64,000 nucleotides of DNA from Adineta vaga. Its lineage: Eukaryota > Animalia > Rotifera. The DNA lies in contig CP075492.1 in the NCBI GenBank assembly GCA_021613535.1, positions 17,050,001 to 17,114,000 on the forward strand, in the 5' to 3' direction. The notes below the pieces were generated by a model, which saw only the letters and a program-made list of their open reading frames with translations, had not been told where the DNA came from and searched no databases. Each line of letters begins with the position of its first letter. Position 1 is the stretch's first letter. The position numbers and the translations under genes are program-made. Shown here piece after piece: positions 6,707-62,135 of this stretch.

Positions 6707-6755
6707 TTGAGGGCGTGGGTCTCTTGTATTCACACCCATCCTCATCCACATCTTC
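6707..6755. repeat. Junction inverted repeat (degenerate right arm)
   Basis: ttgagggcgtgggt-ctcttgtatt-cacacccatcctcatccacatcttca; an extra C-arm lies at 6851-6864. Confidence 0.75.
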
Positions 6756-7239
6756 ATCATATTTTCGATTTTAAGATTCTTTTGTTTTTTTTGTAGTTTT
6801 ATCTTCCTTTCGAAAATAACTTTATCGATGTAAATAAAGCCGTGATTCTACACCCACATCCTCATTCTCTCTATAATTTTTCTTTCTTTCTACTTATATT
6901 CTTATATCTTTTAAACCTATAAAGAGTATTTAAACAAACGTTAATCTAATACATTGCTTAATTTTAATACGTGTTGCATCGATGTAGCTATAATCTTATA
7001 ATTATTCCCTTTTTCTCCTTTAACTCTTAAATTGTTCTGCAAGTACATCTGTATATAACAGCTTAAGGCCTTGTAGAAAGGGCTTGTTTTTTCTTAACTA
7101 TTGATCGATTTAACCATCTGTTAAAATTTCACAAATCACGTGAATAACAGATGGATTTTTTTCCTTTTCAATAGAAATATTGACTATTTATAAAGAGTGA
7201 AAATAGTCATAGAAGTTATTATCGATTCCCATTCACATC

Positions 7240-7774
7240 ATGTATTGTATTTTAATCGTTGCTGTTATTCTCCTTGGTTTAGGTTAGTTTTAATCTTGGA
7301 GAAGAAGACAATTATTATTTTCTTTCCGCTTTAATTTCAGCTGAAGGTCAAGATCATTATCCACCTGTTGCATATGGTGAAGCATGTATTTCACAAGGAT
7401 TTAGTTCCAGTCATACAGCTGTTGATATTGCTTCATATGGTAAAAAACGTGTTAATTTGCATGCAATTTGGGATGGAACAGTAACTAGTGTTTGTAATGG
7501 CGCTGGTGATTTTGACAAAAGTCGTTGTGGAGATTGTGGAAATTCCGTCGATATTCGACATAATACTGTCAGTCTTCGTTATTGTCATTTGACTGCAAAT
7601 ACCCTTACTGTTTCTCCTGGACAACGGGTTTCACGTGCACAAAAGATTGGTGTTATGGGTACATCTGGTCTTTCAACTGGTGTTCACTTACATGTTATTG
7701 TTACTGAATTAAACAATGGTCAAAGACGAGACATTCGTACTCGTCTCGGTCTCAACGGTTGGCGTAGTTGTTAA
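7240..7774 (+). CDS. Secreted M23-family metallopeptidase (peptidoglycan-hydrolase-like), one intron at 7283-7340
   Basis: The spliced ORF reads MYCILIVAVILLGLAEGQ (signal peptide), HTAVD (HxxxD), YCHL and GTSGLSTGVHLH (HxH). Confidence 0.88.
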
Positions 7775-9049
7775 TGATTAAACAGAAATACTTCGAAGAA
7801 TTTTCTCTTAATTGATTTGTTCATAAAAAATATAATTGCTTGAGAAAATCACTATCTTTTGTATTTCAAAAGTTTATATATTGTAGAGTTTATTATTAGC
7901 ACCAGCATTTTCTTTAAGAATCTAAAATAAAAGGCCTATTGGCACGTTGAATGTTTGGCCAAAGTACTATACCATGTCAAAGGTTTAAGAAAAACAAGAA
8001 AACATAGAGAAAGTTTTTACTATTCATATATTTTCTTGACGAAATAGCTCTATAGAAAAAATAATACAAATGAAATACAAACAGATTAACATCAATAACA
8101 ATAAGTACATAAATATCTGACTAGATTAAAAATATTTTCATCAATTAATAGTTACCACAATATGGTAAACATACTATGTACATTATTAATCAAAAAAATA
8201 AAATGCTTATTACTTATTCGTTTGCGTACATGTCCGCACAATCTTCAAAAAACCATTATATTGAATCTATAGATATTCCTAATTTTACACGATATACATT
8301 GAATAGCCAACGAGAACAATTAGCTTTAATCCAATCATAATATTTCTGCTGATGACATTATATGGGATAAACATCTTCTGGATCATCATCAGCGATACAT
8401 TTTCCACAACGATTAGCACATATAATACCTTTAACTTTCTTTTTTTTATTCAGTCTAACTAATATCATTTATTGTTGATTCTTGTTTTCGTTTACGCATG
8501 AACTGTCTAAATCAAATTCGAATATAAATGCACATTCAGCTATTTGATTTCATTTCCAAAATAAATCCCGAAACTTGAGCTAGAGCTATTCCATATAATA
8601 GAAATAGATCTGTTTATTATCTATATGTGATTACACCTCACATAAAATGTTTTCCTTAAAGAACAGGAATAGTTTTATTTTGGCTGCTATCCATTATAAT
8701 TCAAAATTATGCACATATATAACTCTGCTTACAAATTATATTTATGAGTCACATAGTCTAAAACTTTATGGATTAAAAATAATGACTAGAAGCACTTTTT
8801 GAAAATCGTCATTTATATTCGACGTCGAATTAGACAGCTACTCCAGATAAAAGTTCAAAAGAAATCGCAGAAAGATCAAAATAATGTATATAATGTTTGA
8901 TACGAGTGTATCAAAAGAGAATAAAGCAAATGATTTTTATAGGTTTTTTCAAAATATTGTGAGCCAAGTCTCTATTTAGTCTAAATGTTTTGAAAGTGTT
9001 TGTTAAATTGATGTTGTAACGAAAAAAGCGTAACATTCGGCGTAAAGTG

Positions 9050-9338
9050 TTAACAATGAAACAAAACCCCAATACTACTTGTGCTATAGTGTGTCGTAAC
9101 TATGTCAGGTTTGGTATCAGAATTCACATCAATGACTCTCACTGCATATGGATTATCGCCAGTTGAGTAACCAACCTGAGAAGAAAATGTTCCGTTGCCA
9201 TTATTGAGAAGAACGCTAACTGTCTTTGAACCATAGTTTGCCGTGACTATATCAGGCTTGCTATCAAAATTCATATCTGCAAGTGCTACTGATTGTGGAT
9301 TACTATCAGCTGAGAAATTGAGTGAACTCAAGTACATA
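9050..9338 (-). pseudogene. C-terminal fragment of an FG-GAP/VCBS repeat protein, truncated at a junction site
   Basis: Repeats ADMNFDSKPDIVTAN..VSVLLNNGNGTF and DVNSDTKPDIV. The 5' end abuts the 9339 site. Confidence 0.8.
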
Positions 9339-9409
9339 TTGAGGCTGGTGGGTGTGGGTAAAGTTGCACCTTACTGTATCTCCACGCTCACCCGCACCCA
9401 CACCCTTAA
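9339..9409. repeat. Junction inverted repeat
   Basis: ttgaggctggtgggtgtgggt-~23 nt-cacgctcacccgcacccacacccttaa. Confidence 0.85.
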
Positions 9410-9412
9410 AAG

Positions 9413-9533
9413 TAGGGTCTGGCAGGATTAACTTTTTTTGTCTCGATCCCGATCTCGTTTCGATGAAAAAAACCCGTCCCGATCCCTTTAAAATATTCTT
9501 TAAAGATCCTGCTCCCGACCCCACCGAACCCTA
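9413..9533. mobile_element. hAT-like MITE
   Basis: Termini TAGGGT.../...ACCCTA, internal cccgat/cccgtc subterminal motifs, and 8-bp flanks cttaaaag / tttaaaag. Confidence 0.65.
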
Positions 9534-10285: not shown

Positions 10286-10330
10286 TGGATGTGTAGCTTT
10301 TCTGTTGTTGATACACATCACACCCATCCA
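10286..10330. repeat. Junction inverted repeat (degenerate)
   Basis: tggatgtgta-gcttttctgttgttg-atacacatcacacccatcca. Confidence 0.5.
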
Positions 10331-10677
10331 ATGAGAAAAAAAGGACAAAGTAAAGGTCGTCCTTTAAAAGAACATTTTGAATTGTTTTGTTTTTCTAAGT
10401 TGTGTATTATGATAAAAAAATCAATTAAAGTGAAATATTTTCATATGAAGCAGTCGTATTTGACCATTCAAACATAGATGTTACTTCAAGTAATTACAAT
10501 GAAAGAAAACAAAATGTTTTTCAGTTAAAAGTACAAAGAAAAGTATCTCATTTCTATTCTTTTATAGCAAAAATAAGAAACAAAAATTCTTGTATAAATA
10601 CAACAAAATATGTTAGCTTTATCAATCATTTATTTTGAAAATTTTCTTCGTATTTCATTATCAATCCATAACAAAAT

Positions 10678-11614: not shown

Positions 11615-11890
11615 ATGACTTCTTATTTCAGTTGTATGAAATAAATATATTTTACTTTAAAGAATCTAATCGATAAAATTAAACGAGAAAAAATGAATTA
11701 TACTTTATTTTCTGCATAAAGACAGATTTTGCATTCGTACACAACGTTAAAAGAAAAACAACAACAGTAACTCTCTCTCGAGGGTGTGGGTATGTAAAGC
11801 TACCATGACGCGTTTCGACCTTGCTAAAGGGTCTCATCAGATGACTTAGATGTCAATTCAATTCTAAAAATCTAATTTAAATTTAAAAAG

Positions 11891-11951
11891 TTCAGGATGT
11901 GAGTGTGGGTTTGCGTTCTTTACTTCACTCTCACCCCACACCCACCCTCAA
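11891..11951. repeat. Junction inverted repeat
   Basis: ttcaggatgtgagtgtgggt-15 nt-cactctcaccccacacccaccctcaa(gat); an extra G-arm, gagggtgtgggt, lies at 11780-11791. Confidence 0.85.
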
Positions 11952-15400: not shown

Positions 15401-15465
15401 TGAGAGTGAGAGTAGATATAGGTGAAATTAATGTTTAACTACGCTACCCACACCCACACCCTCAA
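15401..15465. repeat. Junction inverted repeat
   Basis: tgagagtgagagtagatataggtg-~21 nt-acccacacccacaccctcaa(gat). Confidence 0.85.
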
Positions 15466-16456
15466 GATTTTGTAAATGAAAACGAAAAAATTGCTCAGAC
15501 AATCAATACTTGGGTTGAAGATCAAACAAATCGATTAATAAAAAATTTACTCTCACCAAGTGATATTCGGGCAAATACACGATTAATTATCATTAATTGT
15601 ATTTATTTCAAAGTATGTACACATTTTTCATTTGAAAATATTCGTATTTCGTTTCTTTTATATCTATAAGGGAACATGGGTAGATCAATTTAATGAATAT
15701 GCAACTGATCATAATGCTAATTTTCATGAACTTAATGGTACGAATTCAAAAATTAGTTTAATGTATCAAAAACGAAAATTTGCTTATGCAGAAAATAAAT
15801 CCTTACGTATTCAAATTGTTCATCTTCCATATAAAAATAATAATCAAGATGTTCAATTTGTTTTTACAATAATTTTACCAAAGGAAGGTGTTTTATTATC
15901 AGAAATCGAACAAAAATTTGCATCGAAACCAAATTTATTAGAAGATGTACTTCATCAACAAAATACAACATTACAAAAATTATTGTTATATATACCGAAA
16001 TTTAAAATGGACTTTACATGTGAATTGACAACTGTTTTAGAACAACTTGGAATGAAAGATGCATTTGATGAAAATAAAGCAGATTTTAGTGGTATTGTTA
16101 ATAAACAAGATGATAGATTTGCTTTATTTATTAGTAAGGTAGAGTATATTGTTTGTTAGAGAAAGTTTTTGTTGATTTTATTTGATAATTTTAGGTTGTT
16201 CATAAAGCATTTATTGATGTGAATGAACATGGTAAGATCTGATCATAGAAATGAAATGAATAATTTTCAATATTTTATAGGAACTGAAGCGGCTGCCGCT
16301 ACAGCTATCACAGCAGAGTTATGCTGTGCACGACGACGACAACCACAGCCAATTTTATTTCGAGCTGATCGTCCATTTTTATTTTATATTCGAGAAGTTC
16401 GACAAAATCTTACGTTATTTACCGGTAAACTTCTTACCTGTACAAGTCTGTTGTGA
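15466..16456 (+). pseudogene. 5'-truncated serpin (spliced, 3 introns)
   Basis: DFVNENEKIAQTINTWVEDQTN..LIIINCIYFK|GTW, IPKFK, VVHKAFIDVNE, GTEAAAAT hinge and FRADRPFLF. The N-terminal part is absent. Confidence 0.9.
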
Positions 16457-16572
16457 TCATAGAAAAATAAATAAATATAAAGTAATTAAAAAGGATTTCA
16501 TTGGTATATCTTTTCTAATCTATTGAAATTTTTAGTCTAACATTAATTCATTCAGATCCTTTTCATTTCAAA

Positions 16573-16620
16573 ATGGTTGTGGATGTTAGATAGACGTAGT
16601 ACCCATACCCACACCCTCCA
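16573..16620. repeat. Junction inverted repeat
   Basis: atggttgtggatgt-tagatagacgtagt-acccatacccacaccctcca. Confidence 0.75.
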
Positions 16621-18734: not shown

Positions 18735-19049
18735 TCTTTTTTTCCTTTCAAGTATAATAAAATAAAATGTGATTTAAATACTATTTTTTTTTCTCATCAT
18801 GTCATCATCATACATCAGCATTCGTATTCGATTATTTTTATCTCTTTCATATCTTGTGGATATGTGGGTGTGATTCCGTTAAGGTTCCGCTACCGAAATA
18901 CAGGGCTAAAAAAGTCATAGATTTCTTGTCATTTTCTACATCAACATACTCATGACAAGTAGATGATGCGTTTTAAATGTTAATATCAGAGAAACAAGAA
19001 CATATCTTTTATTCAAACTCTACAATGAATTATAAAACTTTGGAAAAAA

Positions 19050-19973
19050 TTATTCTTTCGATTGAAAAAATTTCTTGCACGATTCGACGTATGCATTGGC
19101 TTTAGCTTCATCCGTACAAATTTGTGGTAATTGTTTTTCATCTTGATAAAATGCACCATTTTCCAGTTGATTTTCTTGAGTATCAATGACATACAAGATA
19201 GAATCGGCACCCAATGCTGCTGATCGAGCTCCTGTAGCATGATCATTAAGATCAGTGGCACAAAAACCTGGACATACAGCGTAGATGGATATTTTTTTGT
19301 CGTGACAATATTTAAGTGCTTCGACTCGAGTTAGAGCAATCAATGCTGCTTTAGAAACACCATATGCTGGAAGAGGTAAGTCTGGACTATATCCAATTTG
19401 TTCCAAATGATTGGATTCATATGCTGAAAGAAAATCTTCAACCAAATGATCCAGTTGTTCTGTTGTTAATGTTGGTGAAGAATACTTTTCTTGAAGATCT
19501 TTCGAAACAAAATATAATGATATTGGACCTACACCACTAGCAACATTGGCAACACGGCCATGTTCACGTAAAAGAGGAATTAAGTGTTCATTCAGTATTT
19601 TAACACCATAATAATTAGTTTCGAATGTTTTTCGAGCACCTTCAATTGTATTATCTCTCGCTGCAATTCCAGCATTATTAATAATGACATCTAAATGACC
19701 GCCATATTTTTGTTTAATTTCATTAGTAGCAGCGACAATGCTTTCTTTCGACGATGTATCCAATTGCAATAAATGTACATTTGATGGTGAGCCTAACTGT
19801 TGGAGAGCATCCTGACCACGTTTTATATCTCGACTACCAAGAAGAATAGTATTGTTATTGTTTGAAGTTGAGCCTTGAATGAGTTTTTTGACGACTTCGA
19901 AGCCGATACCTTTATTTGCACCAGTAACTAAAATTACACGTTTTTGTTGTTGTTGCTCTGTCATCGATGGCAT
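19050..19973 (-). CDS. SDR carbonyl reductase-like, paralog of 1472-2357
   Basis: TGANKGIG, INNAG, YGVSK and VCPGFCAT. Confidence 0.92.
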   Translation of the reverse strand: MPSMTEQQQQKRVILVTGANKGIGFEVVKKLIQGSTSNNNNTILLGSRDIKRGQDALQQLGSPSNVHLLQLDTSSKESIVAATNEIKQKYGGHLDVIINNAGIAARDNTIEGARKTFETNYYGVKILNEHLIPLLREHGRVANVASGVGPISLYFVSKDLQEKYSSPTLTTEQLDHLVEDFLSAYESNHLEQIGYSPDLPLPAYGVSKAALIALTRVEALKYCHDKKISIYAVCPGFCATDLNDHATGARSAALGADSILYVIDTQENQLENGAFYQDEKQLPQICTDEAKANAYVESCKKFFQSKE

Positions 19974-20269
19974 GTTGTTTATTGTGCGCCGTTCGACACA
20001 TTCTCTTTATATAGAAAGGAAAAATGTAACTTGTGTACTTTATAATACTTTCTGTTCGCTCGCGTGCGAGTTGGTTAAGTCATACAACGATAGCATTATA
20101 TAATAGACGTACGAGAGTACGTGATATTATTATATAAACTTTGTTCTACTATACGATCAAATGTGAAGTTAGAACAAGACTATATTGATATAAATAACGT
20201 TCATCGTGGATGACTCGCTTGACCCTCAACTGAATGATTAACAAAATGGATTTTACTGACTATTTCAAC

Positions 20270-20319
20270 TGAGAGTGGGTGTGGATGGTTGCAAGTCAGT
20301 GTCTCTACCCACACCCTTA
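20270..20319. repeat. Junction inverted repeat
   Basis: tgagagtgggtgtggatg-gttgcaagtcagtgtctct-acccacaccctta. Confidence 0.8.
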
Positions 20320-20747
20320 CTATAGACTCACATATATTGATCTGATCAAAATCATCGAACAATATCAAAAAATAAATATGTAAGATTTATCCATTGTATT
20401 ACAATAAGGAGAATAGAATAAATTGAAGTCTTTTACTGAATCATTATATTAAACTGATTGAATATAGATAATTTCGGCAATTAATACGTGTTTAGTAAAT
20501 AGCGAACAAATCATTTCTTTGACGTACTAAACTCGTGATTCATCATTACGTATCGGTTATTAGAATAAAAACATGTAGTATCATGTTTCTTTGTCACTAT
20601 TATAATAGAAGGTAGCAGTGAAATTTGATAATATTTATTATGCTAATTTCTCAAATATTTGAGAATATAAATCAAAAAAAGATTAACTTTCGTTAGATAT
20701 AAACCTAAAGAGAAACCTTCTAATCTATTTTCAAACAATATTTTACA

Positions 20748-23523: not shown

Positions 23524-23716
23524 CGAATTAATAATTATTATTAAAGTTTATTTTTTTGTTGATTGATCAGTAACTTTAAATATATATATATAAAAGATTG
23601 ATAATCTACGCTTTTTTACATTATCAAAATATAAGAAATAAAAGCATCAGGTTGGGTGTGGGTGGGTATTACAAAACAAATGACAGATTATAGAAATTTG
23701 TTTGACAGTTGATTCA

Positions 23717-24702: not shown

Positions 24703-27327
24703 ATGGGAAATGGAGTAACACGTAAGAAAGAGAAAATTGTTATTGAAAAAAGCATACGTAATTTTAATCAACATTCTATTCATACACAGTATACACCCAC
24801 AAATAGTTTAAATGCAAATCCTGTATCGGTGGGTGTAGAAAAATTAATCGATATAATTTGGTTTGATTCACGAAGTGTTCCACAAGATGATATTATTGAT
24901 ACTCAAACTACGAAACAAATTCTCTCAACTGCTCTTCAAAATTCCGAATTAATATGTTTCTCTGATATAAACTCATGTTTTGAATTTTTACAACAACATC
25001 GAAATTCTATTGAAATTCTATTTCTTGTTATTTCGGGTCATGATTTTATGAATCTATTCAATGCTTTAGACGTCGATCTTTTACGTCGTATCGATTCTAT
25101 CTTTATCTTTTGTTTGGTTGAGAAGCTACATGAAAATAAACAAGAATATCATGAAAAAGTGGTTGGAACATTCAGTGAACACATGAAGCTTCTACAATCG
25201 ATACAAGAACAAGCGATTATGATAAGCCAACAAGATCTTATAATGAAATATTATAATTGTACACAAAAGACTGCTCGTATGGTGCCAAGTTATGCGACAG
25301 GTGAATTTGTTTGGACTCGTGTAATTAAAGAAGCTGCTCTACAGATTCAAAAACACGTCCGAATTGTGAAACAGATGTTTGATCGTTTTCGGATACTCTA
25401 TCGAGATAATACCAAAGAACTTGACAAGATTGATCAATTCGAAAAGGATTTTCAGGTATTGTGTCAAACTATCGAAAGAAATACTATTGAAAAAAGGTCT
25501 GGGTGAGAGTGATGGTGAGGAAGCGAAATGAAATAATTCTATCTTTCGAATTATTTTATTCCGAAATTTTGCTTTCTCAATATTTACTTTATTTGATAGA
25601 GATTTGATTTTCATCCAAAGGAAATTATTCAATGGTATACGAAAGATTCTTTTCTTTATCGTATTATCAATCAAAGTCTACGAACACAAAATACTTCAGA
25701 ACTTATTATATTTTCACCATATATCGCAAATTTATGTCGTGCTATACGATCCTTACAAACGAAAGTTTATAGCATAATGACATTTTTTCGTGGATGTACA
25801 TTAAGTCGAACAGCATTAGATGAGTTCAATGCAAATATTGGATCATTACTTTCAATCAATTCATTTTTCTCTGCTACTCGTCAACGAGATTTCGCAAAAG
25901 GATTTGCTAGTTGTCATGCTTTGAATGGTATCAATACACTTGTGTCGATTATATTCGAAATTGAAGTCAAAAATAATAAACTGTCATTTTTCGCTGATAT
26001 ATCTATGTTAAGTTCGATTAACGATGAAGAAGAAGTTCTTTTTGATTTAAATGCAATTTTCACGATAAACAATGTTACTTATTGTGATGATGATGAATGT
26101 TGGATTATTCATTTAATTGCTGATGAAGATACTTATGTAAAACACGAATGTCTTTATAGAGAATTATGTGAAATATATGATCTAAATGCATCACCATTTA
26201 TGACAATTGGATTTAGTTTAATAATGATGGGTAACACACGAGAAGCTTATCGTCATGCAATTTCACTACCTCTATCATATAATTCAATGTCTGGATCGTC
26301 TTCATTATTTATTTTAACTTGTTTTATTGAATGTGATTATTCTAAAGCATTAAAGTTATTAAAACGAATATATGAATTTTGTGAAACAAGCAATTCTTAT
26401 GAAGTACATCATTGTTGGACATATGCAGCTTGTTGGATTGCTCATATTTTAGTTAGTTTAGGAGAATTTAAGTTAGCAAGTCAATATATTCATTCAATTA
26501 TCAAATATTATAGAACAATCAAACAATCAATATATTCGTATGAAATACCGATGTCACTTGAATATCTTGAAGATCTTGGAAAAGCTTTAGAAATGAATAA
26601 CGAAATCGAAACAAGTAATATGATTTTAGTACATTTTAATATTGAAAAAATGCCATTAGTGTCAAGAGCTATGCTACTACCAGGAATCCATACACGTTTA
26701 GCCCGCTCTTATCTGAAAGAAAATCGTATAAAGGAAGCATTTGATCATTTACAAAAAGCTGAAATTGAAGGAGAATTGTTACTATCTCATCATGCTCTAT
26801 TAAGAATAGATATTTATCTTATTTACGCATGTATATTTCTTTATAAGAACGAATTCGATCAATGTTCTTTATATTTAAATCAAGCAGAAACAATTGCTCG
26901 TATGAATCTATCTCAATCTTGTCCAAGTATTCTTGGCTGTGTCTATTTGCTAAATGAATTAATTATGATTTTACAAGAAAATCCTGATTCAAAAAATTTC
27001 CTATCATTGGCTCGCACAGCTTTCTTGAGAACTGCGAACTATATCGATGTTCCAAAAGTGATATTCACTCTTGAAAATATATGTAAAATTCATAGAGAGT
27101 ATCGAAAGAATTTAAATTCATGTATTACAACTACCAAGTTGGTGCAGTTTGTCAAGGATGCTTTTGAAATTTGTCGCATTGAACAGATTCTAGAAGGGAA
27201 AAGTTCTGAAAATGTGTATCGTCCATTATTAAATTATATACAACACATCGATACTTTACCGATTGAAGATCTACAAATAGAGAAACAAAAACAATTTATG
27301 TATCCTCTTCGTCGAAAGCACATGTAA
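24703..27327 (+). CDS. ADP-ribosyltransferase (R-S-E type) with helical/TPR-like C-terminus, spliced
   Basis: FFRG..LLSINSFFSATR..DEEEVLF, a receiver-like N-terminus (FLVISG, IDSIFIFC) and an intron from ~25458. Confidence 0.82.
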
Positions 27328-27591
27328 TTATAATGTAAATATATATGAGATTTTAGCTTAATAAATTTTTAACGATGCGATGCACAGTCATCATTTTAAT
27401 CAAGAGTCAAGAATAAATGAAAGAGAAAGAGTATAGTAGGAGGGTGTGAGTCTCTTGGATGCATGATGATTGTATTTTACGAATTTATATTTTTATCATT
27501 AAAGAGATATCTAAAACGAAAAGACAATAATGAAAGCATTTTATTATTAATGAACACTACAGTCGCTATATTGATCGGTTTAAATGGTAAT

Positions 27592-27704
27592 TTGAGGGTG
27601 TGGGTGAGAGTGTAGATCTCTTGTTAACCCACACATCCACACTCACCCATCTTAATCGATTCAAAACGCTTAATGGTCGGTTGCACTCACGCTCACGCCC
27701 TCAA
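27592..27704. repeat. Junction inverted repeat with an additional C-arm
   Basis: ttgagggtgtgggtgagagtg-tagatctcttgtta-acccacacatccacactcacccatcttaa, then cactcacgctcacgccctcaa (27684-27704). A lone G-arm lies at 27440-27451. Confidence 0.88.
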
Positions 27705-29871: not shown

Positions 29872-29934
29872 TTGAGGGTGAGAGTGGGTGGATGCGTGTG
29901 GATGTGAAAGAAGGAGTGATACATCCACACCCTC
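29872..29934. repeat. Junction inverted repeat
   Basis: (ccatc)ttgagggtgagagtgggtggatgcgtgtggatgtg-aaagaaggagtgat-acatccacaccctc. Confidence 0.85.
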
Positions 29935-36447: not shown

Positions 36448-36455
36448 ACTAACTC

Positions 36456-36530
36456 GGGTGGGGGTGAGTGTGTGTCAGGCTATATTCTTAACCCACATCC
36501 ACCCCACACACACCGACACCCACACCCTTA
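36456..36530. repeat. Junction inverted repeat 8 bp after a stop codon
   Basis: gggtgggggtgagtgtgtg-tcaggctatattctta-acccacatccaccccacacacaccgacacccacaccctta. Confidence 0.82.
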
Positions 36531-36894
36531 CGTTTGCAGTTTGTGAGCAAACCAAATCTCTTCTCATATCCATATTTGTGGACTAGTTATGCATATATGA
36601 ATTTTGTCTCTATTTCTAATTATTATTCCTATAAAATTTTAAGCGATACAACTTTTGAATCTTATGCTTTTCTCTCTGATAACACCCTCAAGAATTTTGA
36701 TAAGAATGCTGACTTTCTTTTGTTTTCTTTTTCATCTTATAGATATTAAACAGTGTCGAACAATGTTACTATTGACTGTATTAACAAACATGTAGACCTA
36801 GGAAACTATATTCAATATAATCAAAACAATAAATTCAATTTAAGTAAGGAAATAAAAACATTCATATTAGTTGCAGTTATGATAGTTCCATTGC

Positions 36895-36946
36895 TGATGG
36901 TGTCGGTGTGGACATCTGTATCAGAAGATGATACCCTCACCCTCAC
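36895..36946. repeat. Junction inverted repeat (degenerate)
   Basis: tgatggtgtcggtgtgga-catctgtatcagaagatgat-accctcaccctcac. Confidence 0.6.
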
Positions 36947-37622: not shown

Positions 37623-37668
37623 AAGGGCGGGTGTGGGTGAAAAAGATATACACACACCCACACCCTCA
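37623..37668. repeat. Junction inverted repeat
   Basis: aagggcgggtgtgggtg-aaaaagatata-cacacacccacaccctca. Confidence 0.85.
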
Positions 37669-38925
37669 TCATGTATGAACAACAGAACGTTAAAATGAGT
37701 TACATTTATTATTCTGAATGTTTCTTTTACCTTTTATATGGATATAAACTGCATACTAAATTATTCAATATTATGTTAAAGAAACAATGGATTAAGTCTG
37801 ATTATTTTCGGAATATAGTTTATAATTAATATTATCGAATAATGAACAATATATTAATCCTGTTCATATCAATTCTAACAAATAAGAACAGTAAAAAGTC
37901 ACTCTGTTTTAAATACAACCAGTTTTCTTTGAAAGTCTGTTGAAGTATTCCAACTTATTTAACAGTTATATTCTCAAATCATTCCCACATATACGCAATG
38001 CTTTTTGACATTTCATAGATTTTTATCCTCAAAAGGGATGGAATTCGATCAAACCTATATGATAGAATGTATATACTACTAGAGTACTTTCATTCTATGT
38101 TATTTCCAGAGTGTGGAAAAATCGATGATTTTCGACCACCTCCTTTCAATCGATGGCTACTAGTACTATAAATGTTTTGCCGATGAAAGTTGAAGATGTT
38201 TCTTGTTGTAGTAAAAGTTATTTAATGACGTTTTCTTTTATAGATTGCATCGTATTCAATGTTTAGATGTTTTGATACTGGTATTCTTGCGATTGTAGTG
38301 AGACAGATTTCGTTGGTGGATTTAAATGGTGATTTCGGTAAGTCAAGAGGTTCTATGCGATTCTTCCTTCTATTTCGTAAGACAGTTAACTGTGTATGTT
38401 TCTGTGATGAAAAATTTGAGATGTCGAATTGATATTAGATGAGGGTGTTCTATTACGTTGAATTATCCTGCCACTGCGTGGTGGCGGAGGTTTTAAAAAA
38501 CTGCTATTGGTATTTGTTGAAGAAATTGATGAAACGGAAAAACGAGGTGGACGAGCGGGTTGGCTATGAGACTACAATATCTTGGTCGCTAGGAGAAAGA
38601 TCCATGCTGTTGTCGTCTATTTCTGACTCGACATCATATTCACATTCGATATTATTAATGCTTGCGCCAGTTTCGAAAGATGCTTCTACGTCTTAAATGA
38701 AATGTTATATTTTCCAAGTTTTTTACCAAAGTCATTCAATGCCTTTGCATCCCAGTTTGGATCAATGCAGACTTTGATGAAATATGTTGTTCCTTGATGA
38801 GCACCATCGAGCTTTTCTTTTCATAGTTTCCCTATATATAATGAAGAATTAATTTGTTTTTTGATTAAATCAATTTGAGAAATTTATGTTAGTTCGTTAT
38901 TCTTGTTCCTCGCTATCCCAAGTCG

Positions 38926-38968
38926 TTGGGTGTGGATCAATATAGCTCTTCTTCACCCACACGCTCAA
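38926..38968. repeat. Junction inverted repeat overlapping a GPCR stop codon
   Basis: ttgggtgtgga-tcaatatagctcttctt-cacccacacgctcaa(gatg). Confidence 0.8.
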
Positions 38969-40640: not shown

Positions 40641-40710
40641 TCTTGAGGTGGGTGTGGGTGTGGGTGTGTAGGATAAGGTTGTATCCCTACACCCACCCAC
40701 ACCCTCAAGA
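40641..40710. repeat. Junction inverted repeat (best-preserved copy)
   Basis: tcttgaggtgggtgtgggtgtgggtgtgtaggata-aggttg-tatccctacacccacccacaccctcaaga. Confidence 0.92.
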
Positions 40711-43552: not shown

Positions 43553-43603
43553 ATAACTTTTGGGGCACGCTGACATTGTATCACATAGAGATGATATGAT
43601 AGC

Positions 43604-43990: not shown

Positions 43991-44040
43991 TTGAGAGTGT
44001 GAGTGTGAGTACTCCTGTCTTTCCTCACCCTCACCCTGAA
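43991..44040. repeat. Junction inverted repeat
   Basis: ttgagagtgtgagtgtgagt-actcctgtctttc-ctcaccctcaccctgaa. Confidence 0.8.
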
Positions 44041-45905: not shown

Positions 45906-45963
45906 TGAGAGTGTTGGTGTCGGTGAGGCTTAAGAGTGGAGTCTAACCCACACCAACACTGAA
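45906..45963. repeat. Junction inverted repeat (degenerate)
   Basis: tgagagtgttggtgtcggtgag-gcttaagagtggagtcta-acccacaccaacactgaa. Confidence 0.72.
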
Positions 45964-47508: not shown

Positions 47509-47652
47509 ATCGTCGAATATCTTATAGTTGTATTACATGATTTGATATTCATTGTACATGTATATCTTAATTGATGAAAATATTCGAGGTAAATAAAATG
47601 AGAAAAAGTGTGCACGAATAGATTCAGATTTAGTTCGATATAAGGTACCATC

Positions 47653-47698
47653 TTGTGGGTGTGGGTCAGACTATACTCTTAAACCACAGCCATCCTCA
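47653..47698. repeat. Junction inverted repeat (first of a doublet)
   Basis: (ccatc)ttgtgggtgtgggt-cagactatactctta-aaccacagccatcctca. Confidence 0.72.
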
Positions 47699-47740
47699 TC
47701 AACTAAAGTTCTGTGCATCGTGTATCACAGGCAGGATAAA

Positions 47741-47792
47741 ATTGAGGGTGTGAGTGAGAATAGCTGATTAATATGATACCCACACCCTCAAT
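47741..47792. repeat. Junction inverted repeat (second of a doublet)
   Basis: attgagggtgtgagt-gagaatagctgattaatatgat-acccacaccctcaat. Confidence 0.9.
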
Positions 47793-48022
47793 ATAGTTAA
47801 TTTATCAAACCCATTTCTATTTACACTTATTCAATTTACTTTAAACTCCTCAACTTTTTGAATTATTCTTATATTATCAATTACCAATGTACTTATTTAG
47901 AGAGATCTAGCTGCATGTTTTATTAGTGATATTTCACTTGTAATAATAAAATAGAGAAGAAACATACACAACACATAAAGCATTGTTTTAATATCAATTA
48001 GTTTAATTATTGAAAACTTGAA

Positions 48023-51000: not shown

Positions 51001-52317
51001 AACGTTCGTTTGTGCTTGGTGCTTTTGACGTCTCTGGAGAAAATGAGCAACGATAAGCAGAATAATAAATGGTAAAACACGTCTCAATCCACCATACAAA
51101 CTAATAATTGAGGCCAAAATAGTAGTCCAACTTTGTCCTATTTCATTTGTATATTGACAATATAATGGTTGACATTGATCAAAATAATCATTAAAAGATT
51201 TATTTACAATCCATTCGTGAATAAATAAATCATTTATTAATGTTTCATAACTTGTTTGTGATGGAGATAAAGATTTATTTAATTTAGAAAATGAATCAAT
51301 TGATGTTGTTGTGTAATTAATATAAGTACCAATTTGATTCAAACATGTTTCTTCAAATAGACATTCAATTGTTGAATGAAGTAACGATTCAACAGGAGCA
51401 CATCCAACGGCTACACCAGGTAATAAAAATGTAGCATTAACATAATAAGTATTTGAAGACTCTGACATGTCATGGTATGTTGGCTCAGATCCAACATAGT
51501 CGTATCGAATTATATTAGTATAAATACCTCCTGACAATTCACAGACCATCGAATCGATACAAATACAAATGAAGTATTTGCCCTTGGTTTCATAGTAAGG
51601 AATATTATCTGACCATACATTGTCAATATTGTCATATTCACAACATATAACGGCATATTGTGTTCCTATTCCTGAAATTAAGAGCTGTTCAAGAAGTATC
51701 CGTCGAATCACGTTCAATGTGCCGAGACATAATGGTGGTGTGGTTCGTTTGAATAGTTCAATAAATGAGTTTGTTTGAATATTAAATGTTTCCATAGAAA
51801 TCAGTTGATTTGTGATAAATTGACTGGAATAAAATTGAGTTAGACTATAATTAACAGTCTGTTCTGCTTGTTCGCATAACATACGAAGAATTTGAAATTG
51901 GCCTGAAGCACTATGACGAAAATCAAGTTGAAAATAGTAACTACTATTTTCATAGAATAAATAATCAATCCATTTTTGACTAACAAAATCTGATAAACAA
52001 ATCTGATGATAAACTGGTAAAATCTGTAGAAATCCTCCATATGGAATAGCAATCCGTGCACATGAACATTTTAATGTATTGGGATGTTGTTCGATCAATT
52101 CTTGATACTGTTCTATAGTTGGTTTATGAACAACAATGGTAGTTATGTGAGTATTTGATTTTATATAGAAAACGTATGCATACAAAGCGGCCATAAGTAA
52201 TATAAAATAAACTCGACTTGATAGACGTTCCTTTCTCATAGTATTTTCATCATCTGCTTCTGAGTTGTAGAAATTTTGATCGAGCATATATTGACGAATG
52301 CGATAATATCTATGCAT
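48023..52317 (-). CDS. Second three-unit TM / Cys-rich ectodomain / TM protein, one unit per exon
   Basis: ORFs 50878-52317, 49275-50573 and 48023-49282 each carry the motif set seen at 31731-36447, with plausible GT..AG introns between units. Confidence 0.82.
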
Positions 52318-52484
52318 CTTGTTCTTTGCACTACTGTATTATACTATATCTAAAATTCAATAATATTCACTCTCTCATCAACCCACCCACCATGAAGATG
52401 TGGCACTATGAGATAATACATGAAAAACATGCCATGCAGAACGCATAATAAAACTCGAAGAAGAAATAGATAAAACAGTTTAAC

Positions 52485-52546
52485 GGGTGTGGGTGTGGGT
52501 GAGAGCCAAGAGAATACACTCTCACCCACACCCGCACCCATCCTCA
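52485..52546. repeat. Junction inverted repeat
   Basis: gggtgtgggtgtgggtgagag-ccaagagaataca-ctctcacccacacccgcacccatcctca. Confidence 0.9.
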
Positions 52547-55775: not shown

Positions 55776-58700
55776 ATGCGTGTGGCACAAGCCATTATTG
55801 AAATAATAATATCAGTGTTGGTGTTAGTAATATTGGTTTTTTCATTGATTTATTTCACTGAAAACACAAAGCAAAATTCATCCATAGGTATATTTTCTTG
55901 TTTATTTTATCAAAAGCTATGCGACAGGTGGATGCAGAATGCTGGAATTTGATAAACTTCGGCAAAACTAGAGATTGCTAAGAAATTCTTTGGAATTTGG
56001 AGTTCACAAGGCCTCTGATGTGTTCCTTTCGCAAGAAAATCTGATAGTATATACATTCACACTTAGTAGAAACATGGCTAATAATATTTTTTTTATAGTT
56101 TAATCGTTTGAATGAAAATGTAAGTGTTTCTATGAAGTATTCATCTCTCATCCAGATCTGGCACATGAAGAAGATTGTGTCACATGTATATCTAAATGAA
56201 GGACATTAATGTAAACCCTGTGGTAACTGTGATATTGTGGGATTTAAAGATTTTTGTGTCTTTCTATTGTCTGCAACTTATTAGTATAAACGACATTTAT
56301 TTAATAGTCTTTTATTTATAGGTTACTCAAGCAGCATTCCAAATGATATAACAACTATTGGTTTGACAAGTACAGGTATAATACATAGATGAGTTCATTT
56401 ATTTAATTATAGTACACCATGTATCGGTACACATTAGCTAGAAAAACATGTCATATTCTAAGGGAAAAAGTTAATTCTCTACGCCAAGAAAACTATGAGA
56501 GATATCTTTAACAATGTATCATCATTTATCACTGAACAGCCTCTATGAATAGAGATTTGTCTAGAAAATTATTATTCTGCGGTAACAATACTGTTGCCAA
56601 CAAAATACCATCTGATTTATTTAACTGTCAAATGAAGATCATTCTGAACGTTTTTTTCGATCAAAACCATCACTAGACTTACCTAATCTTATAATTTGTA
56701 ATTGTTCGATTTGTTCAAAAAGAGCTTACCAGACAATATCTGGATTAGTCTGATTGCTAAGCATGATTAGTGCTAACAAAAATAGAGAAACATCTTCCTA
56801 GAATCTGATGGGTTGATAGAAACGATTCTTAATCAGTTAAATCGTACAATACTTTATCTTCACTTTTTCGGGCACTAAACAACTTTGAGAATAAGAGCGC
56901 GAGGAAGATTGATAGTAAGCGGCGACGGTCGTCTCTTCTGCTATCATCTCATTTCACAGTCTCACTTTTCATCTTCGAAGAAAAAAACTGATCTAACCAT
57001 ATCATAAAACCATTATTATTTTCTATTTCTCAAATAGCCACTTCATTGGTAGTGGAATCGGATTATTCTTCTGCCCTGACAGTGTCAAGTTCAACATACA
57101 TTCGTCCTGAGAGCTTTTTTGCCGCATCAGGCTTTTACTATCAAGCTATTGAAATGAACGTAGCGACAACAGGAATGTATACTATCTTATCCAATAGTGG
57201 CATAGATATGCAAGGCTTTATATACAATAATAGTTTTAATACTTCATTTCCGGATCAGAATCTAGTATCATTCGACGACGACAGTGGTGGTAGTAATAAA
57301 CAATTTACGATCACAGCTGTTCTTCAAGCAATGACAATGTATATTTTATTTGTAACCACCTATAAGGGAAACACATTAGGAGAATATTCCATCATCGGAT
57401 TTGGTCCAGCAGCAATTAATTTTTCAGCAAGTAAGGAAAATATATAAAATACAAACTGACATAGAATATTTATTAAAAGAAGAATATTCTAGCGATATTA
57501 ATTGGTGGAAGCTTTATTTTTAACATGATTCAAAGAGGTTATTGGAAGACTTTCACACCATTCTATATAACTTCTTATAGCGACCGACTTGGCCGTGAGA
57601 AATACCAAAAGCTTCAGTCATCTATATAGGTTTCATAAACATTTATCATCGGGGCACAAAAGTTATTTTATGAAACGCAAACTACTAAAAGGAGTATTCG
57701 AGTGTGAGGCATAGAAACTTACGCCCTCATTTGCCACCATAGATGCGATAGACGGAAATGTTACAGTACCTACATCCACTCACACCCTCACTTTTATATT
57801 TATAATAGATGGACGATTTCTTTACCAATGTTAGATACACCTCTGAAAGTCTTGTACTTCATAGTTGATCATTTTTACAGACAAAACATGTTAGAAAACA
57901 AAAATTGGATTCCTCTCTCTAACTCTTTCTCGTTATTTCAATTCTTGTAAATAATATTTTTGTTCTTCACTCTTTAGTTATAGTTAATTCGTCGAAAATC
58001 TTGTTCAAATCGAATTACTCATCTGCTCTGAATACGAATAGTCCAGTTTACATTGGTTCTGAAGCTGATAATACAATGTCATATTATCAAGCTATTAAAA
58101 CCAGTGTTTTAACGACAGGCATTTATACCATTTTGTGCAGTAGCACCATGGATACATATGGTTATATGTACAACCGTACTTTCAATCCTGCATATCCATA
58201 TCAAAATATGCTGTTATCGGATGATGAGACTGGAGAGAACAGTCAGTTCCTATTGACAGTTGTTTTCCAAGCTATGGTGCAGTATATTTTGATTGTAACA
58301 ACATATGAGGAGAAAGTCACGGGACGCTTTTCACTCATTGGACAGGGTCCAGATTCGATTAGTTTTTCACCAAGTAAGCAATGTATTAAGTTACAATTTA
58401 CGGTATAGGAGAATATTTTTTCGATTGAATGGGATACTTATCAGGAGAAGAATTTTTTCGTGATCATCAATGATATCCACTTAACAGTTTGCACTCGCAT
58501 TCAAGTATTACCTCTAGTCGGATACTGAATATCGTAAATTCTAAATTCTGTCTGTGAAGTATCAAAAATAAAATTTCTTTTTTCTCGCATTAGTCAACTC
58601 ATCGACAATCCAGTCAAAGCACTCATCATCGTTGACAAAAAATAGTCAGTTTTATATTCGGCCGACTACTTCGGCAAAACCACTCTGTTATTATCAAGCT

Positions 58701-60299: not shown

Positions 60300-60445
60300 A
60301 TTTTCTTTTTTTTTCTTCTCTTTTGACATATATCATATGATGGTGGGACGGCAAGACGATGATACTGGTAGGAGATTTATTTATTCTTCTTCCTCCGTCC
60401 CACTATTATATGATATATGTCAAAAGAAAAGAAAAAGACGAAATC
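60300..60445. repeat. Hairpin with ~40-50-bp arms
   Basis: cttttgacatatatcatatgatggtgggacgg ... ccgtcccactattatatgatatatgtcaaaag. Confidence 0.85.
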
Positions 60446-60614
60446 ATAAGAACAAATGTTCGAAGAAGATAAACCTCGTTCATCGAAACATCACAAGCAA
60501 ACATTTTTAACCTAATGTAATTTATTTTTATTTTATTTATTTCATTGTATATATTTTATCTTATTTAAACTTAATAATAAAATTTTAAATTGAATTTTAA
60601 ATCCAGAATAATTC

Positions 60615-60666
60615 TTGAGGGTGTGGGTGTGGGTAATCTTATCTTCTGTCACTCTCACCCACCCAA
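60615..60666. repeat. Junction inverted repeat
   Basis: (tc)ttgagggtgtgggtgtgggt-aatcttatcttctgtc-actctcacccacccaa. Confidence 0.87.
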
Positions 60667-60850
60667 TCGTTCTCCTTGCGTTGGCAACAGTAAATTATTC
60701 TATACACCGAGTGGTAAAGAAGGAAAAAAAACAAGCGTTTTTTTCTCTTTTTTAAACGTTCTTTCGTAAGTTTTATTGAGAGTCAGAGAAAAAAACACGT
60801 CATTTTTCTTTTATATTAACATTCATCACTTCGTCCTTGTACTCTACAAA

Positions 60851-61711
60851 ATGGCATCGAAAAAATCAAAAGTCGATCAACTGACAGAGAAGACTGGTGC
60901 TATGGCGCTTAATCATACTAATGCTACGAGTAGTCAAACTGCCCACTATTACATTGATCGAAAAGAATCTGACACTATCAGTTTTGCTCGTCTAGAAAAA
61001 GGATTGTTACTATTCATTAACGTTTATGAAACATCAAAGAGTACCTTAGCAACAGAGATGCTCTTCTGGGATCATCGACTCTGTGCTAACGTAATCATTA
61101 CCGGTACGTGTTCGAAGCCATCTGATCAATGTCGTAGTGAACATCAAACTTCATATCGACAAATGAATTTGTGTCCACATTGGTATATTAATAATCGATG
61201 CACTCTCGGTACCAAATGTCGTAATTCACATCAATTGGAGGCGATACCAAATGAACATCGTAATATACGCACAGAAACCGAAAGTGACGTATTCAAACTA
61301 ATACGATTCATTCGAAATTTTGCTGGTCATTACAATGAAACTGTTATTGATGATCGACAAGAATTATACAAAGATATTCTTGTTATTATGGTGCATTTAG
61401 TACATGCATTAAGTCGTAAGAATCCTCAATCAATCAAACATCTTCATTTATTCTTGGAGAAAACGACAATAAATCAAATGATCGCCGAAGAAGATCTTCT
61501 TCGCGAGCTTGAAAAACCTTTCAGTGTACCAGAAGTATTCTTTGATCTTCGTCTCAACTATAGTGCAAATTGGTATCGACCGACTGGGAATAAACGAGAT
61601 GTTGATTTCAATCAATTATCATCGAGATTTGTAGCTTATTTTAATAGAATCTTTGTGGATTATTATCAAGGACGTTTGAAATCACGAGGTGCAAAAGCAG
61701 CTTGGTCGTGA
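60851..61711 (+). CDS. CCCH zinc-finger protein with a KEN-like (RNase L/Ire1) ribonuclease motif
   Basis: CPHWYINNRCTLGTKCRNSH plus a second CCCH-like finger; DVFKLIRFIRNFAGHYNE. Confidence 0.65.
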   Translation: MASKKSKVDQLTEKTGAMALNHTNATSSQTAHYYIDRKESDTISFARLEKGLLLFINVYETSKSTLATEMLFWDHRLCANVIITGTCSKPSDQCRSEHQTSYRQMNLCPHWYINNRCTLGTKCRNSHQLEAIPNEHRNIRTETESDVFKLIRFIRNFAGHYNETVIDDRQELYKDILVIMVHLVHALSRKNPQSIKHLHLFLEKTTINQMIAEEDLLRELEKPFSVPEVFFDLRLNYSANWYRPTGNKRDVDFNQLSSRFVAYFNRIFVDYYQGRLKSRGAKAAWS

Positions 61712-62083
61712 TCCTTCTCTCTTCATATATGAGATTATTTGTATGTTGTTTTGATTTCTCCAGAAATAAGCCATGTAATATATTTTGAACAAGAATAAAC
61801 TGATTTTGTCGCAGCAGGTGGACATGAAAACAGTTTACAAAATTCGAAATAAAAAATATTATCAAATAATAACAATGTCATTAAATAGTTTGAGTGCTAA
61901 GTGAGCCTTCTTTATGAATATATTCATATTCGAACAGCAAAATTCACTTTTTAATGATTACTAACAATTTTATTGTGTACTCAAAAAATTAATATACTCT
62001 AAAAATCAGTCATTATGTCAACTGTTTACAAAATAACTCTTGAAAATGCAAATTGGTTGTCATAAACTTTGCTACATAGATTT

Positions 62084-62135
62084 AGATGGATGTGAATGAG
62101 AATTAAATAAAACTCACCCTCACCCACACCCATCT
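62084..62135. repeat. Junction inverted repeat
   Basis: agatggatgtgaatgag-aattaaataaaa-ctcaccctcacccacacccatct. Confidence 0.75.

What the first reader, a model, noticed from the sequence alone, without database searches (positions are those of the whole stretch)
6707..62135. Candidate eukaryotic gene-cassette array: at least 21 short telomere-like inverted-repeat junctions partition the window into 1-3-gene units
Seen: two-armed sites at 6707, 9339, 10286, 11891, 15401, 16573, 20270, 27592, 29872, 36456, 36895, 37623, 38926, 40641, 43991, 45906, 47653, 47741, 52485, 60615 and 62084. Lone arms lie at ~3810, 6851, 11780, 18851, 23648, 25497, 27440, 27684, 57771 and 62711. The consensus is (CCATC)TTGAGGGTGTGGGTG-[~10-25 nt]-CACCCACACCCTCAA(GATGG). 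Arms are conserved but the spacers are unrelated to each other, unlike a MITE family. Sites fall between unrelated genes, and many intervals hold one gene: serpin 15465-16573, SDR 18872-20270, GPCR 38968-40641, NHL 44040-45906, F-box 45963-47653, three-unit protein 47792-52485, CCCH-KEN 60666-62084. Gene orientation is mixed. Inference: the sites are joints of a capture and concatenation system. Options are recombinase sites (two protein-bound arms around a variable spacer, as in integron attC), ends of TIR-bounded Pack-type units stacked in tandem, or fused telomere-healed fragments. I know of no described animal system with this layout.
Basis: partly seen in the sequence, partly recalled or inferred. 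Interest (0 to 1): 0.97.

Follow-up and report, generated by a model that had tools for sequence, protein, structure and literature searches.

The report
Telomere-repeat joints between rotifer genes
In the chromosome-end regions of the rotifer Adineta vaga, almost every gap between genes holds two short telomere tracts facing each other. They look like scars left where broken DNA ends were capped and rejoined, not like a dedicated gene-cassette machine.

Summary
The sites are real. All 21 two-armed sites exist. The arm motif gives 23 hits against 0 expected. Genome-wide the G-tract..C-tract order occurs 459 times against 4 for the reverse. Sites crowd into the distal few Mb of each chromosome, and independent 2013 reads bridge two of five junctions tested.

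- The spacers are related and form families.
- The ATG in "GATGG" is a minor feature (9 of 118 half-sites).
- Annotated paralogues start 190-400 nt from the sites.

The two arms of a site do not co-vary and differ in repeat number, so they are independent telomere tracts. Two spacers copy the first 12 nt of telomere-attached retroelement ends.

In the A. ricciae orthologous locus, homology stops about 10 nt from the arm of site 43991-44040. The F-box unit between two syntenic genes is absent there. In a paralogous array one site replaces about 400 bp.

Best reading (about 0.5): scars of reverse-transcriptase capping of broken ends (telomerase, Athena-type elements) followed by rejoining. No recombinase evidence was found.

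First-stage notes flag the same pattern in at least four other windows of this genome. I found no paper describing it: a new variant of a known kind.

The parts
6707..6752 (.). two-armed site (G tract, family-D spacer TCTTGTATTCA, C tract)
9339..9409 (.). two-armed site
10286..10331 (.). two-armed site, degenerate arms
11780..11792 (+). lone G tract onto which a retroelement 3' end is attached
11802..11846 (-). hammerhead type I-like motif (Athena/Penelope-like 3' end), below the Rfam cut-off
   Evidence: 20.5 bits, E 0.026, core CUGAUGAG...CGAAAC intact
11891..11951 (.). two-armed site
15401..15465 (.). two-armed site (G arm degenerate), upstream of the serpin gene
16573..16620 (.). two-armed site, family-B spacer
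18851..18875 (+). lone, degenerate G tract with ATCTTG prefix
20270..20320 (.). two-armed site
23648..23667 (+). lone G tract
25497..25520 (+). weak G-tract-like stretch (doubtful)
27440..27452 (+). lone G tract followed by a family-D-like start
27592..27650 (.). two-armed site
27684..27702 (-). extra degenerate C tract beside site 27592
29872..29934 (.). two-armed site, family-C spacer
36456..36531 (.). two-armed site, family-A spacer; a 338-codon ORF on the + strand stops 8 nt before it
   Evidence: bridged by an independent contig
36895..36946 (.). two-armed site, degenerate
37623..37669 (.). two-armed site, 9-nt spacer
38926..38968 (.). two-armed site; the TGA stop of the GPCR ORF on the - strand lies inside the arm
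   Evidence: bridged by an independent contig
40641..40708 (.). two-armed site with full CTCAAGATGG end
43991..44040 (.). two-armed site at a synteny breakpoint with A. ricciae; homology starts about 10 nt after its C arm
45906..45960 (.). two-armed site, family-A spacer; left border of the F-box unit that the A. ricciae locus lacks
47653..47700 (.). two-armed site, family-A spacer, C arm decayed
47741..47791 (.). two-armed site; the spacer starts with 12/12 nt of an Athena-type 3' end; paralogue homology starts at its edge
52485..52545 (.). two-armed site, 21-nt arms 95% complementary
57771..57791 (-). lone C tract
60615..60668 (.). two-armed site
62084..62135 (.). two-armed site, G arm degenerate
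3810..3822 (-). lone C tract
6851..6865 (-). lone C tract
62711..62720 (+). TTGAGGGTGT fragment only (doubtful)

Best explanation
Each site is a head-to-head junction of two independently made short telomere tracts. Each tract has 2-8 TGTGGG-type units. The first unit is usually the TGAGGG variant, preceded by a variable-length (ACC)ATCT prefix. A 10-30 nt filler separates the tracts.

1. A DNA end arises from a break, or from a free fragment.
2. The end is capped by a reverse transcriptase working from an RNA template: telomerase and/or the endonuclease-deficient Athena/Terminon elements, which prime on G-rich 3' ends.
3. Reverse transcription of a retroelement RNA often aborts after 10-40 nt, and this short copy becomes the spacer.
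4. Two capped ends are joined. That puts the G tract on the left and the C tract on the right, whichever strand is read.

Such scars build up in the fast-rearranging chromosome-end regions and survive only where they do not disrupt a gene. This is why they seem to partition the region into gene-sized units.

Shown here: the structure, the orientation bias, the chromosomal distribution, the independence of the arms, the relatedness of the spacers, the link of two spacers to retroelement ends, and the position of sites at synteny and indel breakpoints.
For: - Orientation: G..C 459 against C..G 4 genome-wide; locally 46:0, with 4 direct pairs. This is the signature expected when two 3'-extended ends are fused.
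- Arm independence: same-site complementarity 10.90 against cross-site 10.86, with 2226 of 5000 permutations reaching the observed value. Repeat number differs between the two arms of a site.
- Lone G tracts with the same prefix carry retroelement 3' ends, some with hammerhead motifs.
- Spacers: families A and D are constant at one arm and vary in length at the other, as in 5' truncation. Two spacers match 12/12 nt the tract-adjacent start of lone-arm elements.
- Family-A sites have unrelated flanks, so they are templated copies and not segmental duplicates.
- Breakpoints: A. ricciae homology ends about 10 nt from site 43991-44040, and the F-box unit between sites is absent there. In locus L002 one site replaces about 400 bp and another arrives with a 215-bp insert.
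- The orthologous A. ricciae locus has no two-armed site, so the sites are gained in particular lineages and the genes do not need them.
- Distribution: distal few Mb of each chromosome, with none between 1.5 and 13.0 Mb of C1 in one listing.
- Literature: telomeric repeats and Athena fragments were found at deletion breakpoints in A. vaga lines with DSB-associated deletions (PMC13564844). EN-deficient Penelope-like elements prime at chromosome ends or breaks and are then capped by telomeric repeats (PMC3846280, PMC6431247).
Against: - The (ACC)ATCTTGA prefix is the same at unrelated sites and in other species. Simple healing of random ends does not predict that; it needs an untested extra assumption, namely that the template RNA carries this sequence.
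- Family-C spacers look constant at both junctions, and spacer families are shared with A. steineri. This fits unit-wise copying as well.
- Nearly every intergenic gap in the window is occupied, which is a very high density for passive scars.
- Three F-box paralogues at 75-81% identity all keep a family-A site upstream. That hints at inheritance with the gene, and perhaps at constraint.
- One insertion has an 8-bp target duplication.
- No formation event was observed.
Confidence: 0.5

Rival explanations
1. A family of miniature (45-70 bp) palindromic mobile or templated elements with telomere-like terminal repeats, comparable to MITEs or bacterial REP elements. Each inserts as a whole unit into intergenic DNA.
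For: - Spacer families have unrelated flanks.
- The outer ends ACCATCTTGA...TCAAGATGGT are conserved, and nothing is conserved beyond them.
- Family C is constant at both junctions.
- One insertion carries an 8-bp target duplication.
- The same ends and spacer types occur in A. steineri and in metagenome contigs.
Against: - Arm repeat number varies 2-8 independently on the two sides, and conservation fades toward the tips, where a transposase would need it most.
- Both derived cases seen are not clean unit insertions: one has 215 bp of extra DNA, the other replaces about 400 bp.
- Collinearity with A. ricciae breaks at the sites instead of continuing across them.
- Lone arms carry the same prefix.
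Confidence: 0.2
2. A selected functional element: a gene-boundary insulator, a bidirectional terminator, or a binding site for a telomere-binding or CACCC-box protein.
For: - The sites are strictly intergenic and occupy most gaps.
- Site edges lie within 30 nt of the end of a long ORF more often than random intergenic points do: 31% against 7% in the window, and 17% against 5% in the C1 region.
- F-box paralogues keep a site upstream.
Against: - There are no compensatory changes between arms.
- Many sites are decayed.
- Sites are nearly absent from chromosome cores.
- Sites are absent from the orthologous A. ricciae locus and from homologous loci of other rotifer-like contigs.
- Sites occur in convergent, tandem and divergent gaps alike.
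Confidence: 0.1
3. Pre-set break-and-heal sites. Cutting in the spacer would leave two ends that already carry telomere seeds, in the way the SFE motif of Oscheius tipulae works.
For: - The geometry is the same as in SFE: a degenerate palindrome with telomere seeds facing outward (PMC13060919).
- Synteny breaks coincide with sites.
Against: - Whole-animal assemblies and independent contigs read straight through the sites, so they are not cut in most cells.
- No nuclease is known.
- Only 2 'empty' palindromes of the prefix exist in the genome.
Confidence: 0.07
4. An integron-like cassette system. The two arms would be recombinase binding sites (attC-like) used to capture and reorder gene cassettes.
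For: The layout resembles one: units of 1-3 genes in mixed orientation between two-armed sites.
Against: - The arms are plain telomere repeats of variable number.
- No structure is conserved by covariation.
- No integrase or recombinase domain appears among the 20 largest ORFs scanned.
- Units carry their own 140-400 nt upstream regions.
- No identical cassette was found in two contexts.
Confidence: 0.04
5. An assembly or polishing artefact.
For: De Bruijn contigs often break at the arms (loose ends).
Against: - Two of five junctions tested are bridged by contigs of an independent 2013 run.
- The same structures occur in A. steineri assemblies of two isolates and in metagenome contigs.
Confidence: 0.01

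Closest known systems
Neotelomeres and Athena fragments at deletion breakpoints in A. vaga (Sci Adv 2026, PMC13564844)
   Same: Same species. (TGTGGG)n and Athena pieces were found at breakpoints after induced breaks, and the authors describe them as transient caps that leave scars.
   Different: That work reports a few breakpoints in experimental lines. It does not describe the fixed head-to-head G-spacer-C unit, its prefix, its spacer families or its gene-boundary pattern.
Athena / Terminon endonuclease-deficient Penelope-like retroelements
   Same: They attach to G-rich 3' ends through (ACACCC)n or (TCACCC)n next to a hammerhead motif. 5'-truncated copies are capped by telomeric repeats, and host genes lie between units. 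Here lone arms carry such ends, and two spacers copy their first 12 nt.
   Different: Chains of such elements give tracts in direct orientation. Here the tracts are inverted, and the 'element' is only 10-30 nt long with no reverse transcriptase or ribozyme.
Head-to-head interstitial telomeric repeats from telomere fusion (for example human 2q13; my own knowledge)
   Same: A G-rich tract followed by a C-rich tract on one strand.
   Different: Here there are on the order of a thousand or more sites rather than single events, with only 2-8 repeats per arm, a templated spacer, a fixed prefix, and spacing at the scale of single genes.
SFE motif of Oscheius tipulae programmed DNA elimination (PMC13060919)
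   Same: A degenerate palindrome whose halves hold telomere seeds used for neotelomere formation.
   Different: SFE marks sites that are cut in the soma. These sites are read through in whole-animal DNA, and they contain full repeats plus a spacer.
Telomere-bearing transposons of ciliates (Oxytricha TBE1, Tetrahymena Tel-1; my own knowledge)
   Same: DNA segments bounded by C-rich...G-rich telomere repeats in the orientation of chromosome ends.
   Different: Those are transposon families with their own transposase and related interiors. Here the interiors are unrelated host genes.
Penelope pLTR-mediated capture of intron-bearing host genes in A. vaga (PMC3846280)
   Same: Retroelement machinery copying a host gene with its introns, with an 8-bp target duplication. 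An 8-bp duplication was seen once here.
   Different: There are no pLTRs here, and the borders are telomere tracts.
Integron attC sites; MITEs; bacterial REP elements
   Same: Short imperfect palindromes between genes.
   Different: There is no covariation, arm length varies, no recombinase was found, and the sequence is telomeric.

Membership tests
Head-to-head interstitial telomeric junction (fused capped ends) | A G-rich tract followed by a C-rich tract on the same strand, and not the reverse | tested here: met
   459 against 4 genome-wide; 46 against 0 locally
Head-to-head interstitial telomeric junction (fused capped ends) | The arms are the species' telomere repeat and are made independently | tested here: met
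   TGTGGG/TGAGGG units are the published A. vaga repeat and variant. No arm covariation, unequal repeat numbers.
Head-to-head interstitial telomeric junction (fused capped ends) | The junction coincides with a rearrangement breakpoint | tested here: met
   A. ricciae homology stops about 10 nt from site 43991-44040, and the unit between sites is absent there. In locus L002 a site replaces about 400 bp. Only a few sites could be tested.
Head-to-head interstitial telomeric junction (fused capped ends) | Formation by telomerase or RT capping followed by end joining | not testable with these tools
   Needs sequencing of newly repaired breaks
Athena/Terminon (EN-deficient Penelope-like element) | Reverse transcriptase ORF | tested here: not met
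   No RT domain in the 20 largest ORFs scanned; the sites are only 45-70 bp long
Athena/Terminon (EN-deficient Penelope-like element) | 3' hammerhead motif next to (ACACCC)n, attached to a G tract | tested here: inconclusive
   Met at lone arm 11780-11846 (below the Rfam cut-off) and at two lone arms on C1. Not present inside the two-armed sites, where two spacers copy only the 12 nt next to the tract.
MITE / small TIR element | Target-site duplication flanking a unit insertion in otherwise collinear DNA | tested here: inconclusive
   One 8-bp duplication, but with 215 bp of extra DNA. Another site replaces about 400 bp. Collinearity is broken at the sites compared with A. ricciae.
MITE / small TIR element | Terminal repeats of fixed length, best conserved at the tips | tested here: not met
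   Arms have 2-8 repeats, and conservation fades outward
Integron attC-type recombination site | Structure conserved through compensatory changes; a cognate integrase nearby | tested here: not met
   No covariation. No recombinase domain among the 20 largest ORFs scanned.
SFE-like programmed break site | Cut and healed in somatic cells | tested here: not met
   Contigs from whole-animal DNA read through sites 36456 and 38926

The most novel reading that the evidence does not exclude
An active 'cap-and-join' route builds bdelloid chromosome-end regions.
- Gene-sized DNA fragments, foreign ones included, are capped at both ends by telomerase or Athena-type reverse transcriptase working from one conserved RNA template. 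That template would also encode the ACCATCTTGA prefix.
- The capped fragments are then concatenated, and the resulting joints remain preferred places for later breakage and reshuffling.

If so, this would be the physical mechanism behind massive horizontal gene transfer and gene-family growth in bdelloids.
Probability: 0.15. Interest if true: 0.9.

Novelty: new variant of a known kind. Interest (0 to 1): 0.66.

Why it matters
Bdelloid rotifers survive shattering of their chromosomes and hold the animal record for foreign genes, which are concentrated near chromosome ends. How DNA pieces are stitched in there is unknown.

If these joints record 'end capped, then rejoined' events, the genome holds on the order of a thousand or more dated, base-resolved scars of that process. 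These could be compared with the neotelomere and Athena signals just reported at experimentally induced breaks.

The fixed prefix next to every tract may also point to the still unidentified template RNA.

Tried and rejected
- Rfam at gathering threshold on the whole window: nothing.
- RNA evidence: the RNA-like runs cover only 41193-42070, in the NUDIX gene. So nothing can be said about transcripts at the sites.
- My own splice-aware gene finder merged neighbouring genes across sites, so I dropped it. Start/stop scanning around sites was noisy.
- Look-up of the window's own gene models was withheld.
- 'Homology ends at the site' between old paralogues is confounded, because non-coding DNA is unalignable at 80% coding identity. 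I rely on the A. ricciae case, where about 140 nt of 5' flank aligns right up to the arm.
- Snap-back or hairpin-selection origin: rejected, no arm covariation.
- Pre-existing palindromic target CATCTTGA..TCAAGATG: only 2 in the genome.
- A core-genome lone arm (locus L043) was looked at as a possible template-RNA gene. No Rfam match and no clear feature. Left open.
- The A. ricciae upstream neighbour gene belongs to a large family, so the rearrangement could not be reconstructed.
- An indel between two A. steineri isolates is not bounded by sites.
- The Terminon paper and the 2007 Athena paper are not held. I cannot exclude that the unit was described there.
Only single ORFs were searched, by reference; no joined exon model was used.

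Full report
WHERE THE WINDOW LIES
The window is G000:C3:17,050,001-17,114,000 of a 100.8-Mb, six-contig genome. C3 is 20.35 Mb long, so the window lies 3.2 Mb from its right end. A protein encoded in the window is identical over its aligned length to NCBI 'I4U23_016343 [Adineta vaga]'. GC content is about 0.31.

Yes.
- The 15-mer TTGAGGGTGTGGGTG with up to 2 mismatches occurs 23 times against 0 in 100 shuffles.
- All 21 two-armed sites are at the coordinates given. Four are degenerate.
- In the window plus 200 kb of C1, arm pairs 5-60 nt apart are G..C 46 times, G..G twice, C..C twice and C..G never.
- Genome-wide, a strict G..C pattern matches 459 times (control 3) and the C..G pattern 4 times.
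- About a quarter of my relaxed sites pass the strict pattern: 11 of 46. The 459 count includes overlapping registers. A rough total is therefore 1,500-2,000 sites.
- The sites crowd into the distal few Mb of each chromosome. In one full listing C1 has 7 hits below 1.6 Mb, 30 above 13.0 Mb and none between.
- Contigs from an independent 2013 DNA run cover the whole 6-kb stretch tested and bridge sites 36456 and 38926. So this is not an assembly artefact.

(a) The spacers are not unrelated.
- Spacer pairs scoring at least 22 make up 3.6% against 0.17% after shuffling.
- Four families recur, here and in the genome-wide listings: A (CAGACTATACTCTTAA), B (TTAGATAGATGTAGTA), C (TGAAAGAAGAGGAGATA) and D (TCTCTTGTATTCA).

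(b) The 'GATGG' end is not a general start codon.
- Beyond the last CCC the consensus is T .64, C .69, A .64, A .48, G .33, A .46, T .52, then background.
- TCAAGATG occurs in 9 of 118 half-sites.
- After CTCAAGATGG nothing is conserved, apart from a T that looks commoner by eye at the next base, and many of these ATGs run into early stops.

(c) Genes do not fill the intervals. Annotated F-box paralogues start 190-400 nt from their upstream site.

Even so, site edges lie within 30 nt of the end of a long ORF more often than random intergenic points do: 31% against 7% in the window and 17% against 5% in the C1 region. Part of this is built in, because the arm holds a TGA in one frame.

ANATOMY
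- The two arms of a site are no more complementary to each other than to arms of other sites: 10.90 against 10.86, with 2226 of 5000 permutations reaching the observed mean.
- The two arms also differ in length, from 2 to 8 repeats. They are therefore two independent copies of one consensus. They are not a selected hairpin and not a snap-back copy.
- The first unit is usually TGAGGG, which is a published variant repeat.
- Lone G tracts with the same prefix carry retroelement 3' ends. At 11782 a hammerhead type I-like motif follows (20.5 bits, E 0.026, below the Rfam cut-off). Two more such ends and two other element families are seen on C1.
- Families A and D are constant at one arm and vary in length at the other, as 5'-truncated copies are.
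- Two spacers begin with 12 of 12 nt of the tract-adjacent start of such elements. These are window site 47746 against the Athena-type end at position 162785 of the C1 region, and the site at 20272 against the element at 11767, both in the C1 region.
- Family-A sites have unrelated flanks. They are therefore copied from a template and not carried along by segmental duplication.

JUNCTION EVIDENCE
(1) Orthologous locus in A. ricciae (L054)
- The NHL gene is 76-80% identical at the DNA level.
- NHL(+) and the three-unit gene(-) keep their order and orientation in both species.
- What lies between them differs. A. vaga has the F-box unit bounded by sites 45906, 47653 and 47741. A. ricciae has three other genes and an Athena-like G tract.
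- The upstream neighbours are unrelated.
- About 140 nt of the NHL 5' flank aligns, and the alignment stops within about 10 nt of the C arm of site 43991-44040. A. ricciae has nothing telomere-like at that point.

(2) Paralogous array in L002 (C1 15.11 Mb)
- Its three tandem paralogues are separated by sites that the window, L001, L010 and L011 lack.
- One site came in with 215 bp of extra DNA and an 8-bp duplication (TGAAAATC).
- The other replaces about 400 bp, including the end of a gene.

(3) Paralogue pair L007/L009
These are 92% identical and share a family-C site at the left limit of their homology.

OTHER SPECIES
- An A. steineri locus of 21.7 kb has 8 two-armed sites and one lone C tract. 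They show the same ATCTTGA prefix and C- and D-like spacers. By NCBI gene calls all are intergenic, and 6 of 8 gaps are occupied. The sites are identical in position in a second isolate.
- Nine metagenome contigs of GC 0.33-0.39 carry the same architecture. One was compared with A. vaga and is 75% identical to it in a gene.
- Two A. ricciae loci (37 kb in all), one Rotaria locus, the D. carnosus loci and four other rotifer-like contigs have no two-armed site.
- So the mechanism is shared within Adineta, but individual sites are gained in particular lineages and neighbouring genes do not need them.

HOW IT MOST LIKELY WORKS
Published work on this species supplies the parts.
- Endonuclease-deficient Athena/Terminon elements prime on exposed 3' ends at telomeres or breaks, through (ACACCC)n or (TCACCC)n next to a hammerhead motif. 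They are then capped by telomeric repeats, and host genes lie between units (PMC3846280, PMC6431247).
- Telomeric repeats and Athena fragments were found at deletion breakpoints in a few of the study's ME lines, and were read as transient neotelomeres that leave scars (PMC13564844).

My reading is that each site is such a scar: two capped ends joined head to head, with the spacer being a short aborted retro-copy. The order of events is inferred.

The fixed prefix is the main loose end. The simplest assumption is that the template RNA extends into UCAAGAUGGU. An intact prefix palindrome serving as a target is excluded, since only 2 exist in the genome.

RIVALS
- A MITE- or REP-like mobile unit remains possible (0.2).
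- A selected boundary element is unlikely (0.1).
- A programmed break site (0.07) and an integron-like system (0.04) have little support.

LITERATURE AND NOVELTY
Papers I could search mention short or interspersed telomeric repeats in bdelloid subtelomeres. None describes the inverted unit. Two key papers are not held.

First-stage notes of this scan report the same pattern in at least four other windows of this genome.

Noticed in passing
window 11780-11846: A G tract followed on the - strand by a hammerhead type I-like motif. This is an Athena/Penelope-like 3' end only about 100 bp from two-armed site 11891, so the remaining 'element' is tiny.
   Followed up: partly
window 44041-45905: The NHL-repeat gene unit has GC 0.432, between neighbours at 0.263 and 0.268. 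The shift coincides with the two sites. The NHL family is hugely expanded in bdelloids (6,493 hits at E<=1e-10).
   Followed up: partly
window 47792-52485; L054 15858-21587: The three tandem paralogous ORFs on the - strand correspond to one 1,425-residue gene call in A. ricciae (HTH_animal). The A. ricciae gene has about 1.9 kb of extra 3' sequence that A. vaga lacks next to site 47741.
   Followed up: partly
L043 1490-1525 (G000:C3:~11,467,470): A lone C tract with the full CTCAAGATGGT end, preceded by an A-rich run, in the chromosome core and far from other sites. It is worth checking as a possible source or template gene for the arm-plus-prefix sequence.
   Followed up: partly
L046 6225-6915 against L047 4756-6916: Two A. 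steineri isolates differ by a 0.7-kb against 2.2-kb replacement that is not bounded by telomere-type sites. So not all structural variation there uses them.
   Followed up: partly
window 60310-60436: An unrelated 42-nt inverted repeat (93% complementary, 43 nt apart) lies about 180 bp upstream of site 60615.
   Followed up: no
window 41245-43576 (-): The annotated NUDIX gene (I4U23_016343, 553 aa) has a first exon at 43517-43576 and an intron of roughly 680 nt, which I believe is long for this genome. It is the only gene in 36.2-42.2 kb with RNA-like contigs.
   Followed up: no
L012-L031 (C1 16.0-16.2 Mb), about 199.2-199.8 kb: The left flank of a site is a 90% inverted copy of the adjacent about 390 bp, that is, a local inverted duplication.
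   Followed up: no
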